The notes: a model not told the origin generated them from the letters alone. A DNA stretch of 64,000 nucleotides from IMGVR_UViG_3300042367_000228:248001-312000, one strand, 5' to 3'; positions 1-41,765 are shown, counted from the stretch's first letter. Made by a program: numbers and translations.

Positions 1-435
1 TTCATTTCCTATTACACTAACACCTGGGCGAAATGCAATAGTATCTAATTTTACAGGTTCGTTAGTTGCGGTCTGCGGTAGTACAACAGGAGAAATTGAA
101 ATAACGTTAGCTAAGTCTGCATCTCTTTTAAATCTATCTGCATCTGGCATAAAGATATTAAACACTACTAATCCTGCACCTCTAGCATATAAGTCTTCAA
201 TTATCTGTGCGTATATGTCGCGAGAGAACGGAAATTGCCCATACTTCTCTAATGCAGCATCGTCAATGTTTACTGTAGTAACTGATGAGTCTTGTATTGG
301 TTTACTTGTAATTAATGTATCAAAGTATCTTAGTCGCATACTTTCTACAAATGACGGATCTGCTATACGTACACCCGCTACTAACATAACTGTTAGTAGC
401 GCAGTCCAGGGGTTTAATAATATTTTTTTAATCAT
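1..435 (-). CDS. CHASE2-domain membrane protein, probably an adenylate/guanylate cyclase (5' part; runs off the window)
   Basis: Not in ORF track. Manual translation from ATG 435: MIKKILLNPWTALLTVMLVAGVRIADPSFVESMRLRYFD...VNIDDAALEKYGQFPFSRDIYAQII..., an N-terminal TM helix plus the CHASE2 'v.IDe.sl...GqwPwpR..ya.li' pattern. The cyclase domain is inferred, not visible. Confidence 0.8.
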   Translation of the reverse strand, partial: MIKKILLNPWTALLTVMLVAGVRIADPSFVESMRLRYFDTLITSKPIQDSSVTTVNIDDAALEKYGQFPFSRDIYAQIIEDLYARGAGLVVFNIFMPDADRFKRDADLANVISISPVVLPQTATNEPVKLDTIAFRPGVSVIGNE

Positions 436-1436
436 TTTATTTTTGGCACCAAGTTGTCTTTAAATATTTCCCAACAATTTTCCCAAGTCCATCTAAATGA
501 ACTTATATATACACGGTGTCTATCAAGTTTTAAACATTCTTCAATTGCTGTTTCTAAGTTAGTATCCATAATACCATTACGACCTTGTTCTATAATATCA
601 ATAGGACCTGGCACTGGATATGCAGCAACTGGACAACCTAACGACATTGCTTCAATTATTACAATACCAAACGTATCAGCTGCACTTGGAAAAACAAATA
701 CATCAGCATTAACATAATAATCAGCTAACTCTGATCCTGACTTGTATCCTACAAATTCTACTAATGGATATTTCTTTTCTAATCGTTTACGATAAGGACC
801 ATCTCCTACAATTTGCACATGATACTTTTCGTTTTTAGATAATACACATAGATCATCTAATGATTTTTCTTTAGACACTCTGCCTACATATAGCAAAACA
901 GTTTTGTCTGAATCTGCTTTGTGTGCAGTTGGTTGTAGTAATTCTCTATCAACACCGCGTGTCCATGGTATAACATTTGGTCTAAACTTATGTTCTTTAA
1001 GTTCTTCAACCATTGTTTGTGTAGTAGTTAATACTACAGTTGAATCTTTATGAAACCAACGCACGTATGCGTATGTAATCCATTTTGGTATTCCGTATAT
1101 TTTTTTAATAAACTCGGGAAACTTTGTATGATAGGACGTATTATAGTTAAACTTACGGTTGCGACAATATCCACGAGCTGCTAGCCCAATTGGCCCTTCT
1201 GTGCAAATATGAATATAATCTGGATTGATCCTGTCAATCATTTTTCTAATACCAGAGGTACGGCTAAGTTTTACTTCTGGATATTTTGGAGCATCTATAT
1301 AACGGAAATGACTAGGGTTTATAATTTCTATTTCATATCCGTTTAATTCTGCTTGTTTTTTTATATTAGTGAACGTAGTCACTACGCCGTTAACTTGATC
1401 AAACAAGTTGTCGGAAACTATTAAAATTTTTTTCAT
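432..1436 (-). CDS. GT4 (GT-B) family glycosyltransferase
   Basis: QVNGVVTT, YHTKFPEF, LLYVGRVSKEK and DTFGIVIIEAMSLGCPV motifs. Confidence 0.9.
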   Translation of the reverse strand: MKKILIVSDNLFDQVNGVVTTFTNIKKQAELNGYEIEIINPSHFRYIDAPKYPEVKLSRTSGIRKMIDRINPDYIHICTEGPIGLAARGYCRNRKFNYNTSYHTKFPEFIKKIYGIPKWITYAYVRWFHKDSTVVLTTTQTMVEELKEHKFRPNVIPWTRGVDRELLQPTAHKADSDKTVLLYVGRVSKEKSLDDLCVLSKNEKYHVQIVGDGPYRKRLEKKYPLVEFVGYKSGSELADYYVNADVFVFPSAADTFGIVIIEAMSLGCPVAAYPVPGPIDIIEQGRNGIMDTNLETAIEECLKLDRHRVYISSFRWTWENCWEIFKDNLVPKIK

Positions 1437-2035
1437 TTGATTACCTTACAATTTTCAAAGTGCCAACGTTTCATAGAACTGTTTACTCCTGTTGTGTTGC
1501 AATGCGGGCAAGAGATATGTTGTCTATTTTGTTGAGAAGCAGACATTTTAGCTCTAGTTTCTATTGAGTGCGGTTTACCTGTATTATGTGCAGGTTTACC
1601 TGTTTTAATGCCTTTATTCCAAGCAGGCTTAGTTGCTTTGATTCCTTTATTTGGACCAGGTTTACCTTTCTTTGAATCACGTATTTTAGATTTAGTTTCT
1701 TCTGTACACGGTTTTCCTTGAACTGCTCCACTAATACCGTTTTCAGGTATTAAGTTAGCCCACTCTTTAGATTCTACTATATTATTTTCTTTTGAAAAGG
1801 TTAATGCAAATTCAGTTAACATAGTTTTATTTGTATATGGATCTGAAACCCAAATAGTTTCTACAAATTCCCTTCCGTGTGCAGTAATATGATTTTTCCA
1901 ATGTTTTCCTGATCCTAAATATCTTTTAGGATCTTGAGAAGTAGTTTTGCCGAAATATTTTAAACCTGTTACTGAATGTTGTTTGATATACAGATAAGTT
2001 GGTTTTATATCTATATAAATAATTGTGCTGGGCAT
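1433..2035 (-). CDS. Free-standing GIY-YIG homing endonuclease with NUMOD3 repeats and C-terminal CPHC zinc finger
   Basis: YLYIKQH...KYFGKT...YLGSG; NUMOD3-like TEETKSKIR and HSIETRAKMS; CPHC...MKRWHFENCK. Start moved to ATG 2035 because SD AAGGAG precedes it. Confidence 0.8.
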   Translation of the reverse strand: MPSTIIYIDIKPTYLYIKQHSVTGLKYFGKTTSQDPKRYLGSGKHWKNHITAHGREFVETIWVSDPYTNKTMLTEFALTFSKENNIVESKEWANLIPENGISGAVQGKPCTEETKSKIRDSKKGKPGPNKGIKATKPAWNKGIKTGKPAHNTGKPHSIETRAKMSASQQNRQHISCPHCNTTGVNSSMKRWHFENCKVIK

Positions 2036-2115
2036 TAGTGTCTCCTTAGATAACATATATAATGTTTAGTGCTAGTGGATGATAGTGCATCGCGACTAGC
2101 TTTTTTTATTTAGTA
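2036..2115 (-). promoter_or_regulatory. Late promoter plus structured 5' leader of the homing endonuclease
   Basis: CTAAATA, A-run, then hairpin GCTAGT-CGC-GATG...CATC-C-ACTAGC; same architecture as 41696-41765. Confidence 0.6.
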
Positions 2116-2123
2116 AATTGTTA

Positions 2124-2294
2124 TTATGATTTTGTACACTCGGCAGTAACTTTAAACCAATCAAATTTTACTGTATATGTTAGTGATGATGCTACATGCA
2201 CACACTCTTGTTCTGTAGGAAAAAACAATTTCATTCTTCCAGGCACGTCTGTTGGATCGTGTATGTTAACTACTAGCATTATTAATGTCCACAT
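2124..2294 (-). CDS. Small hypothetical protein (56 aa)
   Basis: MWTLIMLVVNIHDPTDVPGRMKLFFPTEQECVHVASSLTYTVKFDWFKVTAECTKS*; below ORF-track cutoff. Confidence 0.6.
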   Translation of the reverse strand: MWTLIMLVVNIHDPTDVPGRMKLFFPTEQECVHVASSLTYTVKFDWFKVTAECTKS

Positions 2295-3051
2295 TACTTT
2301 TTATCTCCGTCCAGTATATAATTTCCCATTCACCTGTGTGGTGTTCAACTAATGCTGACATAGATTCAACCCAGTCACCATCATTCATTAGTATAATGCT
2401 GTTAATCTCTTTAATAAGTGGTGTATGTGTATGTCCACATATTACACCGTCATAGTTTCTTTTTTTACAGTAGTCAGTTAAGTTAATCTCAAACTGAAAG
2501 ATAAAATCTACAGCCTTCTTAACTTTATGTTTTAGGTATTTACTTAAACTCCAGTATCCGAACCCTAACTTGTGACGCACCCAATTAAAATGATTGTTAA
2601 GTCCTAAGATAAAGTCGTAGCCTTTATCACCTAAGAAACCTAACCATGGTGCTAATCTAGTTATACCGTCAAACAAGTCGCCGTGTGTAACTAAGTAACG
2701 CTTTCCATCTACGCCAATATGATCACACTGATTAACAATAGATATCTTTCCAAATGATATTCCTAATCGTAGCATAGGTCTTAAAAATTCATCATGATTA
2801 CCTGCTATGTAGATAACTTGAGTGTGTTGTCTTGAAATTTTTAAAAATCTACGTATGATATCAGTATGGCTTTGTTTCCATCTTAGTTTATTTTGCTGAA
2901 CTTTCCAACCATCTATAATGTCACCTACTAAGTATAGTGTTTCGCAAGTGTTATGTTTAAGGAAGTCGTTAAGTTGTTCTGCTTTACAATCTCGAGTACC
3001 TAAGTGTATATCCGAGATAAAGATTGATTTATAAGTTTTAAGTTTTTTCAT
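2266..3051 (-). CDS. Calcineurin-like metallophosphoesterase (LpxH/UDP-2,3-diacylglucosamine diphosphatase-like)
   Basis: SDIHLG, GDIID, GNHD, HGD, GHTH and NDGDWVES motifs; commonly paired with a GT4 gene. Confidence 0.9.
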   Translation of the reverse strand: MKKLKTYKSIFISDIHLGTRDCKAEQLNDFLKHNTCETLYLVGDIIDGWKVQQNKLRWKQSHTDIIRRFLKISRQHTQVIYIAGNHDEFLRPMLRLGISFGKISIVNQCDHIGVDGKRYLVTHGDLFDGITRLAPWLGFLGDKGYDFILGLNNHFNWVRHKLGFGYWSLSKYLKHKVKKAVDFIFQFEINLTDYCKKRNYDGVICGHTHTPLIKEINSIILMNDGDWVESMSALVEHHTGEWEIIYWTEIKSNVDINNASS

Positions 3052-3052
3052 A

Positions 3053-3370
3053 TTATTTTTGATGACTCTCTAATGCAGAAATACGCCATTCTAAAACTTT
3101 AACTGAACTTTTATTGTCTGCAGAACGTTCAATGTTTTCAGTTTGCAAGGTTAATAAATCTTGACGTAGTTTTTCACGAGCTAGATCTAATCTGTTATTC
3201 ATTTAGTGTAATGCATCAGCAGTAACTATAGTTTGATTTTTTGCCTCTAACATAGTAATGCGTTCATTAGCACTGGACAATGAGTTAATTAAATACACTA
3301 TACACGAGAATAAGATTGGTATTAGTGCAAACATTATCTTTTCAATAAGTGCGCCTCTTGAAGTTTCCAT
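3053..3370 (-). pseudogene. TM/coiled-coil protein interrupted by an in-frame TAA
   Basis: One frame from ATG 3370 to TAA 3053 with a single internal TAA at 3203-3205 (..DALH*MNNRLDLAREKLRQD..). Confidence 0.55.
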
Positions 3371-3379
3371 ATTAATTCC

Positions 3380-3703
3380 TTATTTACATTTTAATTTCCT
3401 AATAGCCTTAACTAAAAGTTTTTTTTCTTTCCAGCAACTTAATATTGGCTCGTCTATTCCACAGTGTATAAAATATGCACCGGGACTATCCTTCCATCGT
3501 TCTGTACTAGACCAATATTCGTCTTTTAAAAATTCAGTTGGATATTCTACCGAAAGTTGACCTAAATCGTATATATTTGGCAATTGCCAATCTGTATGCC
3601 CGTATGTTGTTAGACTCTCACAATATTTGATTGCTGCATACCAGCTTAATCTTACTTCTGTTTCTTTTGGTGCAAGTATTAAATGCATTGTTCGCTCCTT
3701 CAA
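3380..3703 (-). CDS. DUF1566 (Lcl C-terminal-like) protein
   Basis: LSWYAAIKYC...DWQLPNIYDL...YWSSTE pattern. Confidence 0.7.
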   Translation of the reverse strand: MKERTMHLILAPKETEVRLSWYAAIKYCESLTTYGHTDWQLPNIYDLGQLSVEYPTEFLKDEYWSSTERWKDSPGAYFIHCGIDEPILSCWKEKKLLVKAIRKLKCK

Positions 3704-3709
3704 TAAAAA

Positions 3710-4867
3710 TTATTGCCCTTGTTGAACTTGAATTGGTGCGCATCCTCCGGCTGTAGCACAATTAAAGTTTATTGAGTAGTACTGTTGAGTAGCACCACTC
3801 TGTTGTAGACTTAAGTCTACTGGTTGTCCTGATAAGGTAATATCAGTTATATGATTTGCTGCACCTTGTTGTAATACATCAACATGTTTATTACCACCAG
3901 ATAATTCAATATTAGCATAATAATTTCCACTACCCTTTTGTTGTAAAATTAAACTGTTGTTATTATCAGTTATATTTATAAAAGCACCTTTACTAAACCC
4001 GGCAGTATATGTATCTTGATCTATACTAAGCAAATTAGAATTGCCATTTACTGTTAAGTCAATAAAGTTTACTTGTAAGTTATTGGCTGCAGTTTGATTA
4101 ATAGTAGTAGTGTTAGACGAGCCATTACTGCTGTAATTTACATAATTGTTGTTAGTACCTTTTTGATCAATTGTAATCTTGTTATTGTTTCCTAACTGAT
4201 CTATATATACTTGATTGTCAGTAGTTGATCTAGATGTAAAAGCCGTTACTTTTGCAGTATTAGCAGGAGCGGCATTAAATGAAGATCCACTGCCACCGCA
4301 GCAATATACACTTGGAAACGTAGTCCATGGTAACGTACTTCCTAAGTCAATGCTAGTAGTAGGATCATTTTGATCGTACAAGAATGTTATTTCTGCAATT
4401 TGCATAGAGTTAGCAGCACCTGCGTCTTTAACAATTGGAAACGTTATATTATAATACACGTATGCTTCTGTATTGTTAATAGGGTATACTGGACTAACTG
4501 CAAGTCTATTATTAGGTAATGCAATAAGTTGAGAAGTTATTAACGTCCAACCTCCTGATGTATCATTACTTCCAAATAAACTAAAACTAGCAGGATCTCG
4601 TTCTGGAGAATCATTTGCTGTAGTAAATTGTACTTGACTAATAACTTTACCTTGTGACAGTTTAAGCATAACACCTGCATTAAGTTTATCAAAGTTAAGA
4701 TACTTAGTTCCGGGATTACCGTCAAACGCATTACTAAAGAACTCACCACCTGGACTATTCATACTTGATGGAATATATCCTAACATTAATGGTCTAAGTG
4801 GTACATAGTTAGGAACAGCATCTACATTTGAATACCATAACAACAATATGAAAAATAAAATTCTCAT
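3710..4867 (-). CDS. Secreted protein: galactose-binding/F5-8-like domain plus curlin-like repeats
   Basis: Signal peptide; AFDGNPGTKY...TANDSPERDP...GSND domain; C-terminal repeats of the I-x-Q-x-G-x-x-N type. Confidence 0.7.
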   Translation of the reverse strand: MRILFFILLLWYSNVDAVPNYVPLRPLMLGYIPSSMNSPGGEFFSNAFDGNPGTKYLNFDKLNAGVMLKLSQGKVISQVQFTTANDSPERDPASFSLFGSNDTSGGWTLITSQLIALPNNRLAVSPVYPINNTEAYVYYNITFPIVKDAGAANSMQIAEITFLYDQNDPTTSIDLGSTLPWTTFPSVYCCGGSGSSFNAAPANTAKVTAFTSRSTTDNQVYIDQLGNNNKITIDQKGTNNNYVNYSSNGSSNTTTINQTAANNLQVNFIDLTVNGNSNLLSIDQDTYTAGFSKGAFINITDNNNSLILQQKGSGNYYANIELSGGNKHVDVLQQGAANHITDITLSGQPVDLSLQQSGATQQYYSINFNCATAGGCAPIQVQQGQ

Positions 4868-5949
4868 CGTCTTAACACTCCAGTAGTTTGTGTAATACTT
4901 ATTGTATTACCGCCACTGCTGTCGCCTATTATTGTAGATGCAGCAGTATCATTTTGAATAATAGATATAGCAGTATTAGAAGTATACCCTTGTGTTTTTA
5001 TTTCAGCATAGTGTTCATCTGGGGTTATACGATATGCAGTACCTTTACCTTTTTGTGTACCGTCTGCATTAGGTTGTTCCCACATTACACATACATGCGA
5101 TGTTGGGTCGCAAGGTGCAATAGATTGTATAGTTTCTGCAATCTGTTCTATTCTAGCAGCAATAGTTTCTTGAGTTTTAGCTACTTGATTTGCTAATCGT
5201 CTAGTTGCTTCTTTTTCTAAATCTTCTTGTTCTTCATCTTTCTTTGTTCTAGCTGCTTGTTTAATTGCGTTAACAATTTCTTTTGGCGCAGAAATGATTA
5301 AGTTATTATTGATTTTAGATTCTACCAAACTAATAACTTCCGGAGCAGTTGGCATTGCAGTTCTACTACTAACATAAGTTGCATGAAACGCTTGATCTAA
5401 AGTAACTTCCCCTGCATCATTTGTAACTACAATTTTACCTACTTTACAAATATTCTCTTGTAGTTCGTATTGTTTAACATCTTTTTCATCTTTACAACTT
5501 GGAAGTAGTACAATAAGAGATTGACCAGTTTCATCTACTGTCATAGTAAAGTCAGTACCACGTACTGCAATTGTAGCAGTGGGAGTTTGTATACCTACTT
5601 GCTGTGGATTAGCTTTTGCTATTTGACCACTTGCGTATCTAACAGTACCTAATCCAACTTTTAATGCAAGTTTACCTGCATCTGATTGTTTTGGATCGTA
5701 TACAAAGTCATCTATTACTAATCTACTATTCTCTGTAATTTTAACTTTTGTTTCATCTTTAAATAAAATGTTACTAACACACCCGCCGGTAATGTATGCA
5801 TCCATACTTTCTATAGATGCGCCTTTATCACCTGCAAGTTTTTCTTTGTTACGTTCAATGCTGCATGCAGTGCCTTTAGCGTCTGAAACTGCACCAATTC
5901 CTGCATAAGCATTATTAACAACTAATAATAAAAAAACTAAGAACCACAT
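4864..5949 (-). CDS. FecR-domain protein
   Basis: Signal peptide; F.DETKVKITENSRLVID, GTVRYASG and IQTPTATIAVRGTDF are FecR-domain signatures. Confidence 0.85.
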   Translation of the reverse strand: MWFLVFLLLVVNNAYAGIGAVSDAKGTACSIERNKEKLAGDKGASIESMDAYITGGCVSNILFKDETKVKITENSRLVIDDFVYDPKQSDAGKLALKVGLGTVRYASGQIAKANPQQVGIQTPTATIAVRGTDFTMTVDETGQSLIVLLPSCKDEKDVKQYELQENICKVGKIVVTNDAGEVTLDQAFHATYVSSRTAMPTAPEVISLVESKINNNLIISAPKEIVNAIKQAARTKKDEEQEDLEKEATRRLANQVAKTQETIAARIEQIAETIQSIAPCDPTSHVCVMWEQPNADGTQKGKGTAYRITPDEHYAEIKTQGYTSNTAISIIQNDTAASTIIGDSSGGNTISITQTTGVLRR

Positions 5950-5950
5950 A

Positions 5951-6718
5951 TTACCTCGAAACGGCTGTATTTGAATTTACAATACTGCTTGAATTAGTTG
6001 ACCTTACAGTAATTGTATTATGATCTCCAATTGTACTAATATCTATCATAGAATCGTTAGTACCTTGCTGCTGTGTTACAACAGAGTTGTAACTCCCAGT
6101 AAAATCTTGTACTAGATGATGCCCGATACCTCCATCGTCTTGTTCGTTAATGAAACTGTTAAACCCGCCACTTACTGTTGTATCTACTACACCGTTAGTG
6201 CTATTTAATCGTGTTGTAACTTCATTGTTACTGCCATTAATATCAATTGTACTATGTATGCTACCTTTAGTTAAACTTTGTATAACATAGTTTAAATCAC
6301 CAGTAATTGTTTCAGTAACAACATTAGCATTTACTGGAGTACCAAGTCCAATGTTAAGTAACGTTTGATTTTGATTACCTTTAATGATACTAGAATATAT
6401 ATTATTTGCTCCGCTAATATTATATTGTGCCCAGTTAGTATCTCCAGTGTGCGACAATGTTACTTGGTTAGAATTACCCGTAATAGTCGCATAATTTGAT
6501 GAGCTTGCAGCAGCTGGTACAAAAGCTGTAATAGTGTTACTGGAACTATATAACAAAGGATTGTTAAGAGTTGTACCACTAACGTTATTAGCTCCGCCAA
6601 TCTGATCAATAACGATTGTATTTGCATTTCCGACTTGTTCAATGTATACATTGTTTACTCCTGTACTTGCTGCAAACACTGGACTACTTATTAGTAGTAG
6701 TAGTATTAGTTGTTTCAT
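5951..6718 (-). CDS. Curlin-like repeat protein (CsgA/CsgB-like)
   Basis: Signal peptide; N/Q/G/S-rich repeats (VYIEQVGNANTIVIDQIG, TGSYNSVVTQQQGTN); directly downstream of csgG. Confidence 0.65.
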   Translation of the reverse strand: MKQLILLLLISSPVFAASTGVNNVYIEQVGNANTIVIDQIGGANNVSGTTLNNPLLYSSSNTITAFVPAAASSSNYATITGNSNQVTLSHTGDTNWAQYNISGANNIYSSIIKGNQNQTLLNIGLGTPVNANVVTETITGDLNYVIQSLTKGSIHSTIDINGSNNEVTTRLNSTNGVVDTTVSGGFNSFINEQDDGGIGHHLVQDFTGSYNSVVTQQQGTNDSMIDISTIGDHNTITVRSTNSSSIVNSNTAVSR

Positions 6719-7538
6719 TTTTTAGCTCCTGTGGCGCTTCTTTAAAAGCCCAATGACCTTTCTTAGCACCTTCTTTAATAGTTTCGACCACAGCGGCTTG
6801 AATAGCTTTGTTAGTCGCTTTGTTAATACTTTCATTTATACTTCCGCCCACTTCTGTTTCTAATGCTTTAGTATCTGAAGAGAACATTCTTAATACACCG
6901 ACTTTATCCATATAACTTAGTACGGTTTTAGTTACTACAACTGATGTTAGAATTTCACCAGATGTTACTGATACAATTCTTAAACTTACTGTAACAGTAT
7001 CGCTTTGATATTGAGTTTCACCACCTATGCCAAATATCCTTACACCTGCTCCGCCTGTGATTGTATTTGAATCGTAGCCAACAACTGCGCCTTCTGCAAT
7101 AATTCCAGCAAATGTCATAGCTGGTAATGAAGTAGCATCTTTGCCTTGGAACTGTTCGCGTGTTTGGCGAATCATTTGACGCTCTTTAACTAGGTTGTCT
7201 AAGCCAACGCGTTCTAGTACTACAAACCAACGACTATCACCGACTTCTTTTAATGACTTGATTAAATAGTTTTCAGCACCTTGAGTAATTGCAGAACTTA
7301 AACTAGCAATGTTTGGTATTGATTTGCGTTGTCCAGTTTTATCCGTAAAACCGTATACTGCAATTGGAATAGGTCCACCTTGCGGCGGAGCTAAATAATT
7401 TTCTTCTTTTTTTAAATACGGTGTATTGTCAACGATTGGATCGTCAAACTGTTCACCTGTTATAAGTTTTTCAATTGAACTACTTGCTGCACATCCTTGT
7501 AGTAGTAGAATAATTGCTAATAATAGTAATTTTTTCAT
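6684..7538 (-). CDS. csgG: Curli secretion channel lipoprotein CsgG
   Basis: Lipobox LQGC; IAVYGFTDKTGQRK, SAITQGAENYLI, WFVVLERVGLDNLVKERQMIR, EGAVVGYDSN. Confidence 0.92.
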   Translation of the reverse strand: MKKLLLLAIILLLQGCAASSSIEKLITGEQFDDPIVDNTPYLKKEENYLAPPQGGPIPIAVYGFTDKTGQRKSIPNIASLSSAITQGAENYLIKSLKEVGDSRWFVVLERVGLDNLVKERQMIRQTREQFQGKDATSLPAMTFAGIIAEGAVVGYDSNTITGGAGVRIFGIGGETQYQSDTVTVSLRIVSVTSGEILTSVVVTKTVLSYMDKVGVLRMFSSDTKALETEVGGSINESINKATNKAIQAAVVETIKEGAKKGHWAFKEAPQELKNETTNTTTTNK

Positions 7539-7545
7539 AGTTACC

Positions 7546-8022
7546 TCAAAAATAGAAAGTACCGGCCGGTACTTTCATTGTTGTTGTTTGATTTGGATTA
7601 CTATTACTTGTAATATTGATAATAATTAGTCCATTATCTGTACCTGATCCTAATCCCCATGTAACCGTGTTTCCACCTAAGTCTGGAATATTTCCACAAG
7701 TTGCACCTGGGATAGTACATGTAGACCCTTCGGCAAACATGCTATCAGTAAGTTGTTTTGCTAGTTGTGAATAGATCCTTGATTCTAAGTTTGCTAAGAA
7801 TTTAGCCGCTGGCGTATTAGCTGCTGCTGATGCTGCTTTAGCTGCTAATGAATCTGCAAGTGATTTGTTTTTTTCAACACCTTGTTGTTCTAACTGTTGG
7901 ATAGTTAGAATGTGATTGCTATACCCAATTCCGCTAAATGATGGACTATTAAATGAGTGTTGGAGTTCAGCAGAAAATGCTGATGATGATACTAGTAGTA
8001 ATAATACTAAGATTTTGTTCAC
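7546..8022 (-). CDS. csgF: Curli assembly protein CsgF
   Basis: Signal peptide then ELQHSFNSPSFSG (CsgF N-terminal F.NPsFgG motif), F..NLESRIYSQLAKQL; adjacent to csgG. Confidence 0.85.
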   Translation of the reverse strand: MNKILVLLLLVSSSAFSAELQHSFNSPSFSGIGYSNHILTIQQLEQQGVEKNKSLADSLAAKAASAAANTPAAKFLANLESRIYSQLAKQLTDSMFAEGSTCTIPGATCGNIPDLGGNTVTWGLGSGTDNGLIIINITSNSNPNQTTTMKVPAGTFYF

Positions 8023-8129
8023 TTCTCTCTCTCTCCTTGATAAAGTTACTAACGTATTTACCTACAAAAAGAGTAAAAATAAAGCCAGCAGAAATAATGA
8101 TAAATATAGAATATGATTAAGGATACAAC

Positions 8130-8921
8130 ATGAGAATTTCTGAATTACTTGAAAATGATGGACAATTAGGACTTCCGTTTCAAGATGAACCTACAGATTT
8201 ACAACCAAGAGTAAAACAAAAACGTGTTAAAAAAGACTACGGTCAGACACCTGAAAGACCAGAATTAAGATTTAGTTTAGAAGATCATCCAGAATTAAAA
8301 GCTGCAGCTCAAGCTGTTAAAGCTGGAAAGATGTCTAGAGCAGAATATACAGCATTAGTAAAAAAATATAAACCAGTAAGACCGTATGATTATGTTCCTA
8401 CACCTGCAAGTGAAAAAGATATGAATCGCGGGTTAGATGCTGATAAACGTCATAAGATTAATTCACATATTGCAGACGGTGATGTGGTGCAATTACGATT
8501 AGACATCCCTGCGTATAATCATAAAAATGTGTGGGTTCCAACTATTCACAATAAAGCTGGAATTGCTATTTCTCATAGAGGAGCAGCAGTTATTAATAAT
8601 GTAACCATTAAGTTACCGCAAAAAGGTTCAATGAACATTGCAACAGGCGAAACTAGTAAAGTTCCAATTGCTACTCTAAAAGGTTTTTGGGAAGAAGTAT
8701 CGCCTGAAGATGCAAAGACAGAAGCAATGGCTGCGTTACATGATAAGAATTGGGCTCAGGTAGGTATGGATCCTAAACGACATGCATTCTTCTATGATAG
8801 AAAAACTGAAAGACCTATTATTGGTGGATCACGTGCTGTACAAGTAGGACCGTTAGTGTTAATTAAAGATCCTATCTATGACGATGATGGTGAATATATT
8901 TACGAACGAAATAAAAGATAA
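8130..8921 (+). CDS. Hypothetical late protein with N-terminal MRISELLE tag
   Basis: 263-aa ORF; TAAATA at 8101-8106 and AAGGA SD. Confidence 0.75.
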   Translation: MRISELLENDGQLGLPFQDEPTDLQPRVKQKRVKKDYGQTPERPELRFSLEDHPELKAAAQAVKAGKMSRAEYTALVKKYKPVRPYDYVPTPASEKDMNRGLDADKRHKINSHIADGDVVQLRLDIPAYNHKNVWVPTIHNKAGIAISHRGAAVINNVTIKLPQKGSMNIATGETSKVPIATLKGFWEEVSPEDAKTEAMAALHDKNWAQVGMDPKRHAFFYDRKTERPIIGGSRAVQVGPLVLIKDPIYDDDGEYIYERNKR

Positions 8922-8929
8922 ATAACTTT

Positions 8930-9035
8930 AACAACTTAGGACCGTCACAGTTATCTGTGCCTAAGGCGTCAAGGTTGCCCTACCTAACAGTTTGAGATTC
9001 GCTACCTCTTACAACTGTAAACAGGGCTTTTTTTT
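8930..9035 (+). ncRNA. Candidate structured small RNA
   Basis: TAAATA at 8919-8924; stems CTTAGG/CCTAAG, CACAG/CTGTG, AGGT/ACCT, ACAGTT/AACTGT, GCCCT/AGGGC; ends in T8; no ORF. Confidence 0.5.
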
Positions 9036-9037
9036 GA

Positions 9038-9844
9038 CTAGACTAATCTAGCTCTATAATCGTCTAAAGTTTGATAAATTGATTTTAAGTATCTACGATA
9101 TGCTTTTTCGTATCCCGGTTCGGCTCTACCTTTAAAATCACTATAAGTATGTGATTGTTTTGATATTTCTTTTAAGAATACATTAATAGCAGTGGATTGT
9201 TCTTGAGGTGATAGTTTATGAATCTTACTAATTAGATCTGATGCCGCTTCTTGTGCGTATGCTGCGATTTCGTCAGGTTGTGATTTATATATTTCTCTAG
9301 CACGAATCTGTTCTTCTTCACTTTTAAATTCATCTTGTATTAACGCTGTAAAGAATTTAATTTTATCTCTTTCAACATATCCATGTTTGTATTCGTATCG
9401 TTGTCCGTGACTTACTTGTTTAGCATGTGTTACTTCGTGTAAGAATACAGAAGTTAAGTGATTAATGATAGTGTTAATATCGTTAGCATCGATATTATCA
9501 GTATAATGTTTAAATAATAATTTAATTAAGTTTGCAATTACTTTTGGAGCAATTGTTATAGTATTAGTATCTTCAATATATTGTCCAGTACCTTGTGCTA
9601 ACGATTTAAATTGTATAGTAACATCAGTATTTGTTATTTGTTTTGCGTAGTGTGTTAGAATAGGTTTAATAGAATTAACAAATAACGTATTGTACTTAAC
9701 CATAAATTGCATATCCATTTTTTGGATAGGAGTTTGAGGTCGGGTATTAAACACATTCATAACCGCATCATGCAATGCATTATTAATTTCTGGAGCAACG
9801 TTTGTTAATGATATACGTTCGTATAATAATTCTCTAATTTTCAT
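9038..9844 (-). CDS. Zincin-like metallopeptidase with MKIRELLYE tag
   Basis: FLHEVTH (HExxH) plus downstream DEIAAYA; TATAAATA upstream (~9866-9873). Confidence 0.65.
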   Translation of the reverse strand: MKIRELLYERISLTNVAPEINNALHDAVMNVFNTRPQTPIQKMDMQFMVKYNTLFVNSIKPILTHYAKQITNTDVTIQFKSLAQGTGQYIEDTNTITIAPKVIANLIKLLFKHYTDNIDANDINTIINHLTSVFLHEVTHAKQVSHGQRYEYKHGYVERDKIKFFTALIQDEFKSEEEQIRAREIYKSQPDEIAAYAQEAASDLISKIHKLSPQEQSTAINVFLKEISKQSHTYSDFKGRAEPGYEKAYRRYLKSIYQTLDDYRARLV

Positions 9845-9874
9845 GTATAGTCCTAATTGTATACTATTTATACA

Positions 9875-10495
9875 CTAATTCTCATCACCCATTGTGTTGA
9901 AAAAATCATCTAAAAGCATATTAATAGTACGGGTTGATACGCTTCTAGATTTTAACAATTCAGCTTCGGCAGGTGTAATAGTGGCTAATTTTTTAAAATC
10001 TTCAACTATGAATGCAGTCCATTTACCTTTCGGAATTCCGGTAGGTTCTTTAAAACCAATACTCCTATCTAATGAAATCTCAACTCGATCTCTTCCTTTA
10101 TACATACTGTTTGGAATAGCAAGACAGTAAAATTCGTCCGAATATTTAGAATAACATAAAGCTCTAATTAAACCAGTTTTATTTTTAAGACCACTAATAG
10201 CAATAGAATTAGTCCATTCATCTTTTGCAATATTATTGTTTCTAAAACAACTTACTGCTTTTTTAGCATCGGACAAACATGGATAAAAATCATGTCCAAC
10301 TTCGGCAACACGAACATAAGCCCCTTGTGATGTTATCGCTAACGCATTTTCTAATACAGTTTCAATTTGAAGATCGCCAGTTTCTACTAGTTTTCTATAT
10401 AATGCAATTTCGTACTTTGGTGCATTTGGCCAACGATATGGTGCTAAAAAATCAAAAAATTTATAATCTTCGGGTGTAACAAGTGCTGTACTCAT
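9875..10495 (-). CDS. Hypothetical early protein
   Basis: 206-aa ORF behind a sigma70-type promoter. Confidence 0.7.
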   Translation of the reverse strand: MSTALVTPEDYKFFDFLAPYRWPNAPKYEIALYRKLVETGDLQIETVLENALAITSQGAYVRVAEVGHDFYPCLSDAKKAVSCFRNNNIAKDEWTNSIAISGLKNKTGLIRALCYSKYSDEFYCLAIPNSMYKGRDRVEISLDRSIGFKEPTGIPKGKWTAFIVEDFKKLATITPAEAELLKSRSVSTRTINMLLDDFFNTMGDEN

Positions 10496-10564
10496 AATTT
10501 AATTTTAATGTATAATGTGTTTAATAGATTTAATGTATAGATACTCTTTGTATCTAATGTCTAT

Positions 10565-10592
10565 ATTATACAGTAATTACTTCGATTGTCAA
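10565..10592 (-). promoter_or_regulatory. Sigma70-type early promoter
   Basis: TTGACA-16 nt-TATAAT. Confidence 0.7.
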
Positions 10593-11474
10593 TCAGTTAC
10601 TCAATTTTTTAACAATATATTCAACCATCTCTCCTGCTATGTTAGTACCACAATAATGATCAAAACCGTTAAATCCAGGATTTGAATTAGCTTCACATAC
10701 TCTAAATCCGCGATTATCAAATAATAGATCAATACCTGCTATTTCTAATCCTAACGCTTTAGCGGTAGCCAATGCAATTTCTTCTATTTCGGGAGTTACA
10801 GTATAAGGTTCGCCTTTACCACCTATTGTAATGTTTGCACGAAAGTCGCCTTCAGGAGCAATACGTTTCATAGCTCCGAGTACTTTATCTCCTACTACAA
10901 ATACTCTTAAATCTACACCAGGGTAATCATTAAGATATTCTTGTACTAGTAGTTTTTTTTCATTATCTAAATTTTTAAGGAATTCGATTAATTTATGATA
11001 TTCTTTTTCTGTTTGACACAGATATACACCCTCACCGAAACTACCAACTAATACTTTTATTACGCAAGGAAATCCTATATGTGTTGCGATTAAGTTGTGT
11101 GTAATTGGAAAGTGTACTAACATTGTTGTCGGTACTGCTATGTTAGCGTTTGAAAGAATTTGACCAGTGTGGAATTTATTTTGTACTATATGTATACTGT
11201 TGCTCGAGTTAACGCATGGGATGCCTAGTAATTCAAAATACCTAATTACAGCTAATTCAACCGAAGTGATACCGGCACCTAATCTTATTAACACTAGGTC
11301 AGGGAGAGAAAACTCTTTGCCGTCGTATTTGATTGACTCACCAATGATGATATCAAAGTTAGAAAATTGACATACAGATGCGTCGATGTTAGAATCCATG
11401 AAACTAATAAGTAGTTTACTAGTTTCATAGTCTATTGTAGTTTGTTTTGTAAGAATTATAACAGAATGTTTCAT
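10593..11474 (-). CDS. rimK: RimK-family ATP-grasp ligase
   Basis: NKFHTGQIL, GSFGEGVYL, QEYL, DLRVFVVG, FRANITIGG, AGIDLL, EANSNPGF. Confidence 0.88.
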   Translation of the reverse strand: MKHSVIILTKQTTIDYETSKLLISFMDSNIDASVCQFSNFDIIIGESIKYDGKEFSLPDLVLIRLGAGITSVELAVIRYFELLGIPCVNSSNSIHIVQNKFHTGQILSNANIAVPTTMLVHFPITHNLIATHIGFPCVIKVLVGSFGEGVYLCQTEKEYHKLIEFLKNLDNEKKLLVQEYLNDYPGVDLRVFVVGDKVLGAMKRIAPEGDFRANITIGGKGEPYTVTPEIEEIALATAKALGLEIAGIDLLFDNRGFRVCEANSNPGFNGFDHYCGTNIAGEMVEYIVKKLSN

Positions 11475-41631: not shown

Positions 41632-41695
41632 AATTACCTTATGATGTTTAAAAAACTGTATTATACAATATTATTATCATCCTGTCAATAATATT

Positions 41696-41765
41696 GATAA
41701 ATAAAAAAATGTAGTTCACGATATGGGGATATCTAACTACTCTAACGCCGCGGGAGGCATCAGCA
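41696..41765 (+). promoter_or_regulatory. Late promoter plus structured leader of HNH endonuclease
   Basis: GATAAATA, A-run, GTAGTT-CAC-GATAT-GGGG-ATATC-T-AACTAC, then GCC-GCGGGA-GGC around the SD. Confidence 0.6.

What the first reader, a model, noticed from the sequence alone, without database searches (positions are those of the whole stretch)
1..8065. Late-expressed curli-like trans-envelope cassette: CsgF-CsgG, two curlin-repeat proteins, FecR and a CHASE2 protein
Seen: a co-directional cluster behind a late promoter (GGTAAATA at ~8056-8063) with csgF, csgG, a curlin-like protein, FecR, a lectin-like+curlin protein, DUF1566, a phosphoesterase, GT4 and a CHASE2 membrane protein. Established: csgF/csgG cassettes have been reported in SAR11 and OM43 myophages, generally noted as lacking clear curlin subunits; FecR plus CHASE2 cyclase loci occur in bacterial signalling. 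Inference: a complete secretion-plus-signalling module that could display amyloid-like fibres on the infected cell (aggregation, superinfection or grazing protection) and relay to cyclic-nucleotide synthesis.
Basis: partly seen in the sequence, partly recalled or inferred. Interest (0 to 1): 0.68.

Follow-up and report, generated by a model that had tools for sequence, protein, structure and literature searches.

The report
Phage curli operon with receptor cyclase
A 372-kb T4-like phage from lake water carries a curli (type VIII) secretion operon joined to a FecR/CHASE2 adenylate cyclase; this cassette was already described in marine SAR11 and OM43 phages, so this is a new member in a new habitat and genome type, not a new system.

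Summary
The gene cluster is real. On the minus strand lie csgF, csgG, a six-repeat curlin protein, a secreted FecR-domain protein, a CBM32-lectin+curlin protein and, after a 5.4-kb insert, a CHASE2 receptor.

The same six-gene core, in the same order, is present in HTVC008M, Melnitz and 32 IMG/VR contigs. It was published in 2022 (PMC9599517), so the kind is known.

New or corrected here:
- The host phage is a 372-kb T4-like genome found in at least 18 lake-water metagenome runs.
- DUF1566, the phosphoesterase, GT4 and a missed GIY-YIG endonuclease sit in a variable slot and are not core.
- The second curlin carries interchangeable glycan-binding heads (CBM32 here, PA14 in HTVC008M).
- FecR plus CHASE2-cyclase is a bacterial two-gene module: 9 of 20 alphaproteobacterial CHASE2 loci against 0 of 20 controls, never with CsgG.
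- GGTAAATA is not this genome's late consensus (NATAAATA), although a TAAATA core keeps its position in 14 of 17 relatives.

Fibre formation, FecR–CHASE2 binding and expression timing remain untested.

The parts
8055..8062 (-). GGTAAATA box 38-39 nt upstream of the csgF start; candidate (non-consensus) T4-type late promoter
   Evidence: Sequence read. A TAAATA core sits at the same distance in 14 of 17 relatives. GTAAATA is not enriched upstream of genes in this genome (5 observed, 2.6 expected).
7546..8022 (-). csgF: signal peptide, then an N-terminal FNSPSFSG motif matching the CsgG-binding peptide of E. coli CsgF
   Evidence: PF10614, 26.9 bits, cut-off 25.8. The family profile's only PDB hits are CsgF 6l7a/6lqh, weak (E 0.58), aligned at the N-terminus. 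42% identical to Melnitz CsgF.
6684..7538 (-). csgG: outer-membrane lipoprotein channel (lipobox LLQGC)
   Evidence: PF03783 E 2.5e-48. E. coli CsgG structures E 1e-47; the constriction residues Y51/N55/F56 align to I/S/L.
5951..6718 (-). curA: secreted protein of about 12 strand-turn units (six curlin-type repeats); candidate major fibre subunit
   Evidence: Periodic G-x-x-N/Q columns in an 18-sequence alignment. Profile hit to 8c50 CsgA, E 1.7e-7. Model pLDDT 78.7, all beta. Top structural match 8c50_A, Z 19.5.
4864..5949 (-). Secreted FecR-domain protein (FecR fold 52-146, charged coiled-coil linker, Cys-containing C-terminal domain); proposed periplasmic partner of the CHASE2 receptor
   Evidence: PF04773 E 2.2e-9. 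Best conserved of the non-enzymatic parts (mean column identity 67%). FecR genes flank CHASE2 cyclases in bacteria.
3710..4867 (-). curB: signal peptide, CBM32/F5-8C lectin-like domain (about 46-170), CCGG linker, 3-4 curlin repeats, C-terminal Cys pair
   Evidence: PF22633 and PF07012. NCBIfam CsgB/CsgA, weak. Model residues 56-166 match CBM32/discoidin at Z 10-12.5; residues 212-385 match CsgA 8c50 at Z 15.3 and 8enq at Z 14.3.
3380..3703 (-). Lcl_C (DUF1566) domain protein; accessory, present only in this phage and in the identical contig L008
   Evidence: PF07603 E 3e-9. Absent from L009-L012, which are otherwise 95-99% identical.
3203..3370 (-). 55-aa ORF with one hydrophobic helix; accessory
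   Evidence: Conserved in L009-L012.
3053..3202 (-). 49-aa coiled-coil-like ORF that fills the only apparent gap in the cluster
   Evidence: Read from the sequence.
2266..3051 (-). LpxH-like metallophosphoesterase; accessory, probably a PlcP-like lipid phosphoesterase
   Evidence: PF00149 E 2e-12. NCBIfam LpxH, partial. 77% identical copy in the same slot in L022/L023/L038.
2124..2294 (-). 56-aa ORF; accessory
1433..2056 (-).
   Evidence: PF07460 E 8e-11; PF01541 weak. No such gene between MPE and GT4 in L022.
432..1436 (-). GT4 glycosyltransferase; accessory, best matches are lipid glycosyltransferases
   Evidence: PF00534 E 4e-25 and PF13439. NCBIfam GlcNAc-PG synthase and MGlcDAG synthase. 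44% identical to the GT4 next to an MPE in bacterial locus L048.
1..435 (-). First 145 codons of a 682-aa CHASE2 receptor adenylate cyclase. The gene continues 1,614 nt beyond the left edge of the window (genome 246387-248435).
   Evidence: PF05226 E 1e-36 and PF00211 E 1.3e-13 on the full protein P0001. Catalytic residues checked.

Best explanation
This is a phage-borne type VIII (curli) secretion operon fused to a bacterial-type FecR/CHASE2 receptor adenylate cyclase. It is carried as one tightly packed transcription unit by a 372-kb T4-like lake-water phage.

Shown by sequence, profiles and models:
- CsgG is a lipoprotein channel.
- CsgF keeps the N-terminal CsgG-binding motif.
- CurA and CurB are Sec-exported curlin-repeat beta-solenoids.
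- CurB carries a CBM32-type glycan-binding head.
- The last gene encodes a periplasmic CHASE2 sensor, three membrane helices and a class III cyclase with both metal-binding aspartates, the Lys/Asp pair that specifies ATP, and the catalytic Arg. The transition-state Asn is replaced by Ser.

Inferred:
- In the infected cell CsgG/CsgF export CurA, which polymerises into amyloid fibres. CurB is incorporated as a nucleator or tip subunit and makes the fibres sticky for glycans.
- The secreted FecR-domain protein is the periplasmic partner of CHASE2. Some envelope or secretion state is thereby converted into cAMP, which is read by a host effector, since the phage encodes no cNMP-binding protein.
- Transcription starts at a TAAATA-type box upstream of csgF and is probably driven by the phage gp55 late system.

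The Lcl_C gene, the PlcP-like phosphoesterase with GT4, and the homing endonuclease are separate cargo in a variable slot.
For: Domains.

Synteny: the same six-gene order in HTVC008M and Melnitz and in 32 IMG/VR loci.

Selection: dN/dS 0.03-0.25 for all six genes.

Curlin subunits: the CurA profile hits curli CsgA 8c50 at E 1.7e-7; the model has pLDDT 78.7 and top match 8c50_A at Z 19.5. The CurB model matches CBM32 and CsgA.

Export signals: signal peptides on CsgF, CurA, FecR and CurB, and a lipobox on CsgG, across all relatives.

Cyclase residues.

FecR-CHASE2 linkage: a FecR-domain gene lies next to a CHASE2 cyclase in bacterial loci L048 and L060, and in 9 of 20 sampled alphaproteobacterial CHASE2 loci against 0 of 20 control regions (Fisher p 0.0012).

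Late transcription: a gp55 homologue is present in the genome and the TAAATA core is positionally conserved.

Expression hint: contigs from lake metatranscriptome libraries, 90-95% alike, lie on csgG, FecR and the phosphoesterase.

Literature: PMC9599517 reports the same cassette.
Against: - No phage curli fibre has ever been seen. Buchholz et al. saw no clumping in Melnitz cultures (PMC9004378).
- The CsgG constriction residues are not conserved and CsgE is absent, so gating and substrate selection must differ from E. coli.
- The cyclase has Ser where the transition-state Asn normally stands.
- The FecR-CHASE2 fold test gave no verdict.
- The promoter box is not the genome's late consensus.
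- The RNA-library contigs come from relatives and could be DNA carry-over.
- The host is unknown.
Confidence: 0.6

Rival explanations
1. Sensor first. The curlin-repeat proteins and the CsgG/F channel mainly serve the receptor: they act as a surface antenna or ligand-delivery path for FecR/CHASE2. The main output would then be cAMP-driven reprogramming of the infected cell, not adhesion.
For: - FecR and the cyclase are the best conserved parts (mean column identity 67% and 66%), against 39% for CurB.
- In bacterial locus L048 a FecR protein and a CHASE2 cyclase flank a different outer-membrane channel, a TolC-like OEP.
- PMC5498481, which surfaced in the CHASE2+FecR paper search (not read here), concerns cAMP signalling (Clr) in Sinorhizobium. 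From my own knowledge, the Sinorhizobium CHASE2 cyclases need an outer-membrane protein for signal perception.
Against: - Two full curlin subunits with 6 and 3-4 repeats, under purifying selection, are more than an antenna needs.
- Per PMC9599517, the second curlin gene and the cyclase are less often present in podophage versions than in myophage versions, yet CsgG, CsgF and one curlin gene are always kept.
Confidence: 0.15
2. Pore only. CsgG/CsgF is repurposed as a gated outer-membrane pore that times lysis or acts as a secretin/pinholin analogue (Buchholz et al. 2022). On this reading the repeat proteins are unrelated to fibres.
For: - The constriction residues Y51/N55/F56 are replaced and there is no CsgE gate.
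- The proposal is made in PMC9004378.
Against: - That paper assumed csgA/B were missing, but they are present and conserved.
- An outer-membrane pore cannot depolarise the inner membrane.
- CsgF keeps its CsgG-binding motif.
- In E. coli, CsgF serves fibre nucleation (PMC7029224, citing Nenninger et al. 2009).
Confidence: 0.08
3. Uptake channel. The ungated CsgG pore lets nutrients or cofactors (iron chelates, vitamins) into the periplasm, with FecR acting as an iron-related regulator (ideas in PMC7029224 and PMC9599517).
For: - No CsgE.
- The name of the FecR family.
Against: - The FecR-domain protein has a signal peptide but no N-terminal anti-sigma domain or membrane anchor.
- Its bacterial relatives pair with CHASE2 cyclases, not with TonB receptors or ECF sigma factors.
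- The idea does not explain the two curlin proteins or the lectin head.
Confidence: 0.07
4. Passenger DNA. The cassette is a recently transferred mobile block without a role in this phage.
For: - Cassette proteins are more similar to Melnitz (42-48%) than core proteins are (25-35%).
- The window's cyclase nests inside the clade of the other viral cyclases.
- Homing endonucleases are nearby.
Against: - All ORFs are intact in 32 loci, the order is conserved, and dN/dS is 0.03-0.25.
- The cassette is kept in two 372-kb genomes that differ by 12-42% in the proteins of the cassette.
Confidence: 0.03

Closest known systems
T8SS-FecR-adenylate cyclase cassette of marine pelagiphages (HTVC008M, HTVC023P-type podophages) and OM43 phage Melnitz; described in PMC9599517, partly in PMC7029224 and PMC9004378
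   Same: - Same six genes in the same order: csgF, csgG, curlin, FecR, curlin, CHASE2 cyclase.
- 42-48% identity to Melnitz.
- The cyclase belongs to the same viral clade (99/98 support).
- No CsgE/C/D.
   Different: - The host genome is 372 kb, against about 140-147 kb, and is only 25-35% identical in T4 core proteins.
- The habitat is lake water. PMC7029224 found no curli operon in freshwater pelagimyophages.
- A 5.4-kb accessory insert lies before the cyclase.
- There is no adjacent histidine kinase, unlike the podophage versions.
- The head domain of the second curlin is CBM32 instead of PA14.
E. coli/Salmonella curli system (csgBAC-csgDEFG)
   Same: - CsgG lipoprotein channel (E 1e-47).
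- CsgF with the N-terminal FxNPxFxG motif.
- Secreted subunits made of Q/N/G-rich strand-turn-strand repeats that model as a beta-solenoid.
   Different: - No CsgE, CsgC or CsgD.
- All genes in one operon.
- Constriction residues I/S/L instead of Y/N/F.
- Subunits lack a Gly-rich N22-like leader and contain cysteines.
- One subunit is fused to a lectin domain.
- The operon is linked to FecR and a receptor cyclase.
Bacterial FecR-domain protein + CHASE2 sensor pairs (e.g. LysM-FecR with CHASE2 histidine kinase in Burkholderia, PMC5192318; FecR with CHASE2 cyclase in Alphaproteobacteria, this work)
   Same: - A secreted FecR-domain protein is encoded next to a membrane receptor with a periplasmic CHASE2 domain.
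- The receptor has the same CHASE2-3TM-class III cyclase architecture.
   Different: - In bacteria the pair is not next to csgG (0 of 20 loci).
- No CsgG was found anywhere in three such genomes.
- Bacterial FecR partners are often far larger (up to about 2,100 aa).
Pontibacter korlensis CsgA (PDB 8c50) and other multi-repeat curlins (PMC10192328)
   Same: Best sequence and structure match of CurA and of the CurB C-terminal half: E 1.7e-7, Z 19.5 and 15.3, 23-24% identity.
   Different: - Repeat number differs.
- rmsd is about 9 Å, because the solenoids twist differently in model and fibre.
- The phage proteins have a long insert between repeats 1 and 2 (low pLDDT, residues 49-71).

Membership tests
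Curli / type VIII secretion system | CsgG-family outer-membrane lipoprotein channel | tested here: met
   PF03783 E 2.5e-48. E. coli CsgG structures E 1e-47 over residues 1-268. Lipobox LLQGC.
Curli / type VIII secretion system | Canonical constriction residues of E. coli CsgG (Y51, N55, F56) | tested here: not met
   They align to I, S and L, with a one-residue longer loop.
Curli / type VIII secretion system | CsgF with an N-terminal CsgG-binding peptide | tested here: met
   PF10614, 26.9 bits against a cut-off of 25.8. The motif F-N-S-P-S-F-S-G aligns to F-R-N-P-N-F-G-G of 6l7a CsgF; F24, P27, F29 and G31 are invariant in 17 relatives.
Curli / type VIII secretion system | Secreted subunits built of curlin repeats that fold as a stacked beta-solenoid | tested here: met
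   CurA profile against 8c50, E 1.7e-7. Curlin_rpt is found only in CurA and CurB genome-wide. Models and matches. These are predictions, not fibres.
Curli / type VIII secretion system | Accessory CsgE gate/adaptor | tested here: not met
   PF10627 has no match in the 372-kb genome; the E. coli control rings. It is also absent from the marine phage cassettes (PMC9599517).
Curli / type VIII secretion system | Formation of extracellular amyloid fibres | not testable with these tools
   Needs expression, Congo red/ThT and electron microscopy.
Pelagiphage-type T8SS-FecR-cyclase cassette (PMC9599517) | Gene order csgF-csgG-curlin-FecR-curlin-cyclase, with homology of each gene | tested here: met
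Pelagiphage-type T8SS-FecR-cyclase cassette (PMC9599517) | Histidine kinase gene directly upstream (podophage form) | tested here: not met
   The upstream neighbours 8130-8921 and 9038-9844 have no kinase domain. This agrees with the myophage form.
Pelagiphage-type T8SS-FecR-cyclase cassette (PMC9599517) | Carried by a marine SAR11/OM43-type phage of about 40-150 kb | tested here: not met
   A 372-kb genome with terminal repeats. It is held by lake-water and freshwater metagenomes. The host is unknown.
CHASE2 receptor class III adenylate cyclase | Periplasmic CHASE2 between membrane helices, followed by a cyclase domain | tested here: met
   PF05226 at residues 15-325 and PF00211 at 422-580. 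Hydrophobic segments read.
CHASE2 receptor class III adenylate cyclase | Complete catalytic set: two metal Asp, substrate Lys/Asp, transition-state Asn and Arg | tested here: inconclusive
   D430, D476, K472, D546 and R557 are present. The Asn position is Ser in this clade and in Melnitz, but Asn in HTVC008M, L015, L019 and L036. Activity is untested.
FecR/CHASE2 sensor pair | A FecR-domain gene adjacent to the CHASE2 gene more often than chance | tested here: met
   9 of 20 CHASE2 loci against 0 of 20 control regions in the same genomes, p 0.0012. Pfam-confirmed in L048 and L060.
FecR/CHASE2 sensor pair | Physical binding of the FecR domain to the CHASE2 domain | tested here: inconclusive
   The fold test returned 'no answer', which is evidence neither way.
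T4-type late promoter | gp55-type late sigma factor encoded by the phage | tested here: met
   tblastn with Melnitz gp55: 35% identity, E 8e-14, at genome 106112-106366. gp33 and gp45 were not detected at that threshold.
T4-type late promoter | Match to the genome's own late box NATAAATA, 20-35 nt before the start | tested here: not met
   The box reads GGTAAATA. GTAAATA occurs 5 times against 2.6 expected; ATAAATA occurs 45 times against 3.3 expected.
T4-type late promoter | Conservation of the box in relatives | tested here: met
   A TAAATA core lies 20-40 nt upstream of csgF in 14 of 17 divergent loci, within otherwise unalignable sequence. The base before it is T, G or C, not A.

The most novel reading that the evidence does not exclude
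The cassette is a virus-encoded outside-in signalling organelle. Lectin-tipped amyloid fibres are exported through CsgG/F, and their secretion or engagement state is read in the periplasm by the FecR-domain protein. It is passed to the CHASE2 cyclase, so that contact of the infected cell with glycans (other cells, particles, grazers) changes cAMP and reprograms the infected cell. The interchangeable CBM32/PA14 heads would tune what the infected cell sticks to and senses. The module has moved between at least three phage lineages and from sea to lakes.
Probability: 0.15. Interest if true: 0.75.

Novelty: new member of a known kind. Interest (0 to 1): 0.4.

Why it matters
Phage-encoded curli operons are common in ocean viromes. 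PMC9599517 found them at all 65 GOV2.0 stations, yet no function has been shown.

This member extends the cassette in two ways: to lake water, and to a 372-kb T4-like genome. The comparison also sharpens what should be tested:
- The conserved unit is six genes.
- The 'FecR' gene is best read as the partner of a CHASE2 receptor, not as an iron regulator.
- The second curlin is a modular glycan-binding subunit.

If fibres are made, infected planktonic cells would become sticky. That bears on aggregation, particle export, superinfection and phage spread in dilute waters.

The finding itself is not a new kind of system.

Tried and rejected
- FecR-CHASE2 complex prediction (FecR 17-215 with CHASE2 24-313, own alignments): score 0.01, verdict 'no answer'. 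This is no evidence either way.
- My idea that the FecR C-terminus is a curlin repeat: hhalign of the last 60 residues against the CurA profile gave only a 12-column match at probability 2.9%. Dropped.
- Foldseek against the PDB with the CurA model gave nothing below E 0.1. The exhaustive VIA search found CsgA.
- blastn of the region against 50,697 phage records: no match. Only protein-level searches find the relatives.
- Sigma-70 and terminator scans of 1-10600 were not above shuffles: 55 against 48.3 promoters, 4 against 4.4 terminators.
- The perfect hairpin at 7555-7576 is weak in relatives and follows from the codons of the conserved KVPAGTF, so it is not proposed as an attenuator.
- The FecR profile against PDB sequences gave no hit.
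- No cNMP-binding protein and no CsgE in the phage genome.
- No Rfam family in the window.
- The top 'bacterial' hits for FecR in MAGs of six phyla (L040-L047) proved to be mis-binned phage contigs. L041 carries T4-type DNA polymerase and gp44/45/62. They were not used as evidence for a bacterial origin.
- Host identification was not attempted beyond habitat.

Full report
**What is there.** The window is bases 248001-312000 of a 372,016-bp IMG/VR virus record with direct terminal repeats. From 8022 down to the left edge, thirteen minus-strand ORFs follow each other with overlaps or gaps of at most about 70 nt.
- csgF, 7546-8022.
- csgG, 6684-7538.
- A curlin-repeat protein, here called CurA, 5951-6718.
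- A FecR-domain protein, 4864-5949.
- A second curlin-repeat protein with a lectin-like head, CurB, 3710-4867.
- An Lcl_C (DUF1566) protein, 3380-3703.
- Two small ORFs, 3203-3370 and 3053-3202.
- A metallophosphoesterase, 2266-3051.
- A small ORF, 2124-2294.
- A GIY-YIG/NUMOD3 homing endonuclease, 1433-2056.
- A GT4 glycosyltransferase, 432-1436.
- A CHASE2 protein, 1-435.

Pfam supports every named domain.

**The cyclase prediction.** The CHASE2 ORF continues 1.6 kb beyond the window. The full 682-aa protein has CHASE2 at residues 15-325 and a class III nucleotide cyclase domain at 422-580. After it the gene direction changes, so it is the last gene of the unit.

Alignment to solved cyclases and to 15 viral homologues shows:
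- both metal-binding Asp residues;
- the Lys and Asp that specify ATP;
- the catalytic Arg;
- Ser in place of the transition-state Asn in this clade and in Melnitz, while HTVC008M and three other loci keep Asn.

It is therefore an adenylate, not a guanylate, cyclase by sequence. Its activity is untested.

**The secretion half.**
- CsgG matches E. coli CsgG structures at E 1e-47 and has a lipobox. The three constriction residues of the E. coli channel are replaced by I, S and L.
- CsgF passes the Pfam cut-off narrowly. It keeps the N-terminal F-x-N-P-x-F-x-G motif that plugs into CsgG.
- CurA has no Pfam hit alone. Its 18-member family shows G-x-x-N/Q columns at regular spacing. The family profile hits the Pontibacter curli subunit 8c50 at E 1.7e-7. 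The AlphaFold model (pLDDT 78.7, pTM 0.78) is a run of 8-9-residue strands joined by two-residue turns. Its top match among 48,161 chains is 8c50_A at Z 19.5, well above generic beta-helices at Z 15 or less.
- The CurB model is weaker (pLDDT 60.9). Residues 56-166 match CBM32/discoidin galactose-binding modules (Z 10-12.5). Residues 212-385 match CsgA of Pontibacter (Z 15.3) and the E. coli CsgA fibril (Z 14.3), tied with SufD-type helices.
- Curlin_rpt matches occur nowhere else in the genome, and CsgE is absent.
- CsgF, CurA, FecR and CurB all begin with signal peptides in all relatives.

**It is a known cassette.** Protein searches of 50,697 phage records find CsgG and the CHASE2 cyclase together only in Pelagibacter phage HTVC008M and the four Methylophilales Melnitz phages. 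In both, the annotated order is csgF, csgG, curlin, FecR or hypothetical, curlin or hypothetical, cyclase.

The literature moved in three steps:
1. Zaragoza-Solas et al. (PMC7029224) and Buchholz et al. (PMC9004378) wrote that csgA/B are missing.
2. Wittmers et al. (PMC9599517) then identified CsgA/B, FecR, a second CsgA/B and an adenylate cyclase in myo- and podophages.
3. The same paper found the genes at all 65 GOV2.0 stations and in metatranscriptomes, and proposed aggregation, superinfection defence and uptake as roles.

That paper does not mention CHASE2, lectin or PA14 domains, or jumbo phages, and mentions fresh water only in a reference title. A paper search on 'curli', 'jumbo phage' and 'CsgG' listed no paper holding the term 'jumbo phage'.

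**What differs here.**
- *Genome type.* The genome is T4-like. It has homologues of gp23, gp20, gp21, gp55, TerL, gp44, gp46/47, UvsW and UvsX, but they are only 20-40% identical to Melnitz. The cassette proteins are 42-48% identical.
- *Cyclase tree.* All viral cyclases form one clade (99/98). A Rickettsiales MAG (L048) is the nearest bacterial sequence. The window's clade is nested among the HTVC008M/Melnitz-type sequences. This fits the transfer between viruses proposed in PMC9599517.
- *Habitat.* The 8.2-kb stretch is held almost completely by lake-water and freshwater metagenome runs: 18 runs with at least half of its words, from 19 studies, five of them possible sources.
- *Expression hint.* Contigs from two lake metatranscriptome libraries, 90-95% alike, lie on the phosphoesterase, on FecR (5088-5412) and on csgG (7249-7470). 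This hints that relatives are expressed, but it does not exclude DNA carry-over.

**Core and cargo.** Thirty-two IMG/VR loci (CsgG 59-100% identical) include a second 372-kb genome and contigs of 141-188 kb. All keep the six-gene order. The stretch between curB and the cyclase varies from 0 to 5.4 kb. Depending on the locus it holds a RimK-type ATP-grasp (eight loci), GP88, an amidoligase, an fn3 protein, endonucleases, or the phosphoesterase+GT4 pair (this phage and L022/23/38).

Two observations show that these genes are cargo:
- A strain 95-99% identical (L010) has cleanly lost everything from the 55-aa ORF to the end of GT4.
- Lcl_C is present only in the window and its identical contig.

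DUF1566, the phosphoesterase and GT4 are therefore not parts of the module.

CurB is modular. Only its C-terminal curlin part is shared. The head is CBM32 here and in L036, PA14 in HTVC008M, other unassigned domains elsewhere, and absent in four loci.

All six core genes are under purifying selection, with dN/dS 0.03-0.25 in three comparisons.

**The signalling half.** A scan of 185,579 species genomes with the FecR profile gave two kinds of hit.
- Phage contigs mis-binned into MAGs (L040-L047). L041 carries T4 replication genes.
- True bacterial loci at 24-37% identity, mostly Alphaproteobacteria.

In L048 and L060, Pfam confirms a FecR-domain protein close to a CHASE2 cyclase of the same architecture. 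In L048 a TolC-like outer-membrane protein lies between them. None of three such genomes has any CsgG.

In a sample of 151 alphaproteobacterial genomes, 63 have CHASE2. Of 20 CHASE2 loci fetched with 7-kb flanks:
- all encode CHASE2 cyclases;
- none has csgG, csgF or a curlin gene;
- nine have a FecR-domain ORF beside them, against none of 20 control regions 100 kb away (p 0.0012).

A CHASE2 histidine kinase next to a LysM-FecR protein is also described in Burkholderia (PMC5192318). The phage 'FecR' lacks an anti-sigma domain. It is therefore better read as the periplasmic partner of the CHASE2 receptor than as an iron regulator. Direct binding remains unshown; the fold test gave no verdict. 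The phage encodes no cNMP-binding protein, so a host effector would have to read the cAMP.

**Promoter.** The genome's late box is clear. NATAAATA lies 20-35 nt before start codons. In the 100 nt upstream of genes, ATAAATA occurs 59 times against 8.8 expected; in the narrower sense-strand window it occurs 45 times against 3.3. A gp55 homologue is present.

The csgF box reads GGTAAATA at 8055-8062, and GTAAATA is not enriched (5 against 2.6). The consensus GATAAATA in the same intergenic region belongs to the divergent gene 8130-8921.

Even so, 14 of 17 divergent relatives have a TAAATA core 20-40 nt before csgF, within otherwise unalignable sequence. The base before it is always T, G or C rather than A. 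I read this as a real promoter element, possibly a weaker or differently timed variant of the late class. 'Late-expressed' remains an inference.

**Verdict.** The system is an already published kind, so this is a new member. Its points of interest are:
- a lake-water, 372-kb T4-like carrier;
- a delimited six-gene core beside a cargo slot;
- interchangeable lectin heads on the second curlin;
- statistical support for FecR-CHASE2 as a pre-existing bacterial sensor pair.

Function (fibres, binding, cAMP, timing) is inferred, not shown.

Noticed in passing
window 432-3051 (phosphoesterase 2266-3051, GT4 432-1436); L048:1-2095; L022:15057-17050: The LpxH-like metallophosphoesterase and the GT4 (best NCBIfam matches are lipid glycosyltransferases) look like a plcP-agt lipid-renovation pair, as described for SAR11 in PMC4796936. 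In the bacterial locus L048 the same pair is followed by a UDP-glucose dehydrogenase. A phage copy would be an auxiliary gene pair for phosphorus-sparing membrane lipids. Direct comparison with characterised PlcP/Agt was not done.
   Followed up: partly
window 41690-41765 (+); genome 243092(+), 334271(-), 346786(-): There are four copies of a conserved element: a GATAAATA late box followed by a hairpin. The hairpin stem differs between copies by compensatory changes (GTAGTT/AACTAC against GCCGTT/AACGGC). Each copy stands before a 239-265-aa ORF; the two ORFs scanned had no Pfam hit. No Rfam family matches in the window.
   Followed up: partly
genome 324074-357960 (outside the window): The motif CCAGTGAGAGA(T/C) stands a few bases before the start codon of seven small plus-strand genes. 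As an 8-mer it occurs 11 times upstream of genes against 0.7 expected. It may be a shared translation or regulatory signal of one gene class.
   Followed up: no
L020:15744-18408: In this 188-kb relative the CHASE2 cyclase is split into two ORFs (matching residues 1-334 and 355-682), with a homing-endonuclease-like ORF between them. This could be an intron, an intein-less insertion or a broken gene.
   Followed up: no
L010:9068-9344 against window 432-3370: A 95-99% identical strain has a clean deletion that joins the first 35 codons of the 55-aa ORF to the last 61 codons of GT4. It removes the phosphoesterase, the endonuclease and most of GT4.
   Followed up: yes
window 7555-7576 (-): A perfect 9-bp GC-rich hairpin plus a T-run lies inside the last codons of csgF, just before csgG. 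In relatives the hairpin is weak and follows from the codons of the conserved peptide KVPAGTF, so it is probably not a regulatory terminator.
   Followed up: yes
window 8130-8921 (+) and 9038-9844 (-): Both neighbours of the cassette carry consensus late boxes. The 268-aa protein has an HExxH motif and weak DUF4344 (putative metallopeptidase) similarity. It reappears beside the cyclase end of the cassette in L014 (53% identical) and L031 (31% identical). Neither neighbour has a signal peptide.
   Followed up: partly
L040-L047 (genome contigs): Contigs binned as Luteolibacter, Flavobacteriaceae, Legionellales, Pirellulales, Rhodobacteraceae and Bacteroidetes MAGs carry the whole phage cassette. 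One also carries T4-type DNA polymerase and clamp-loader genes. These are phage contigs mis-binned into bacterial MAGs and would mislead host or origin inference.
   Followed up: yes
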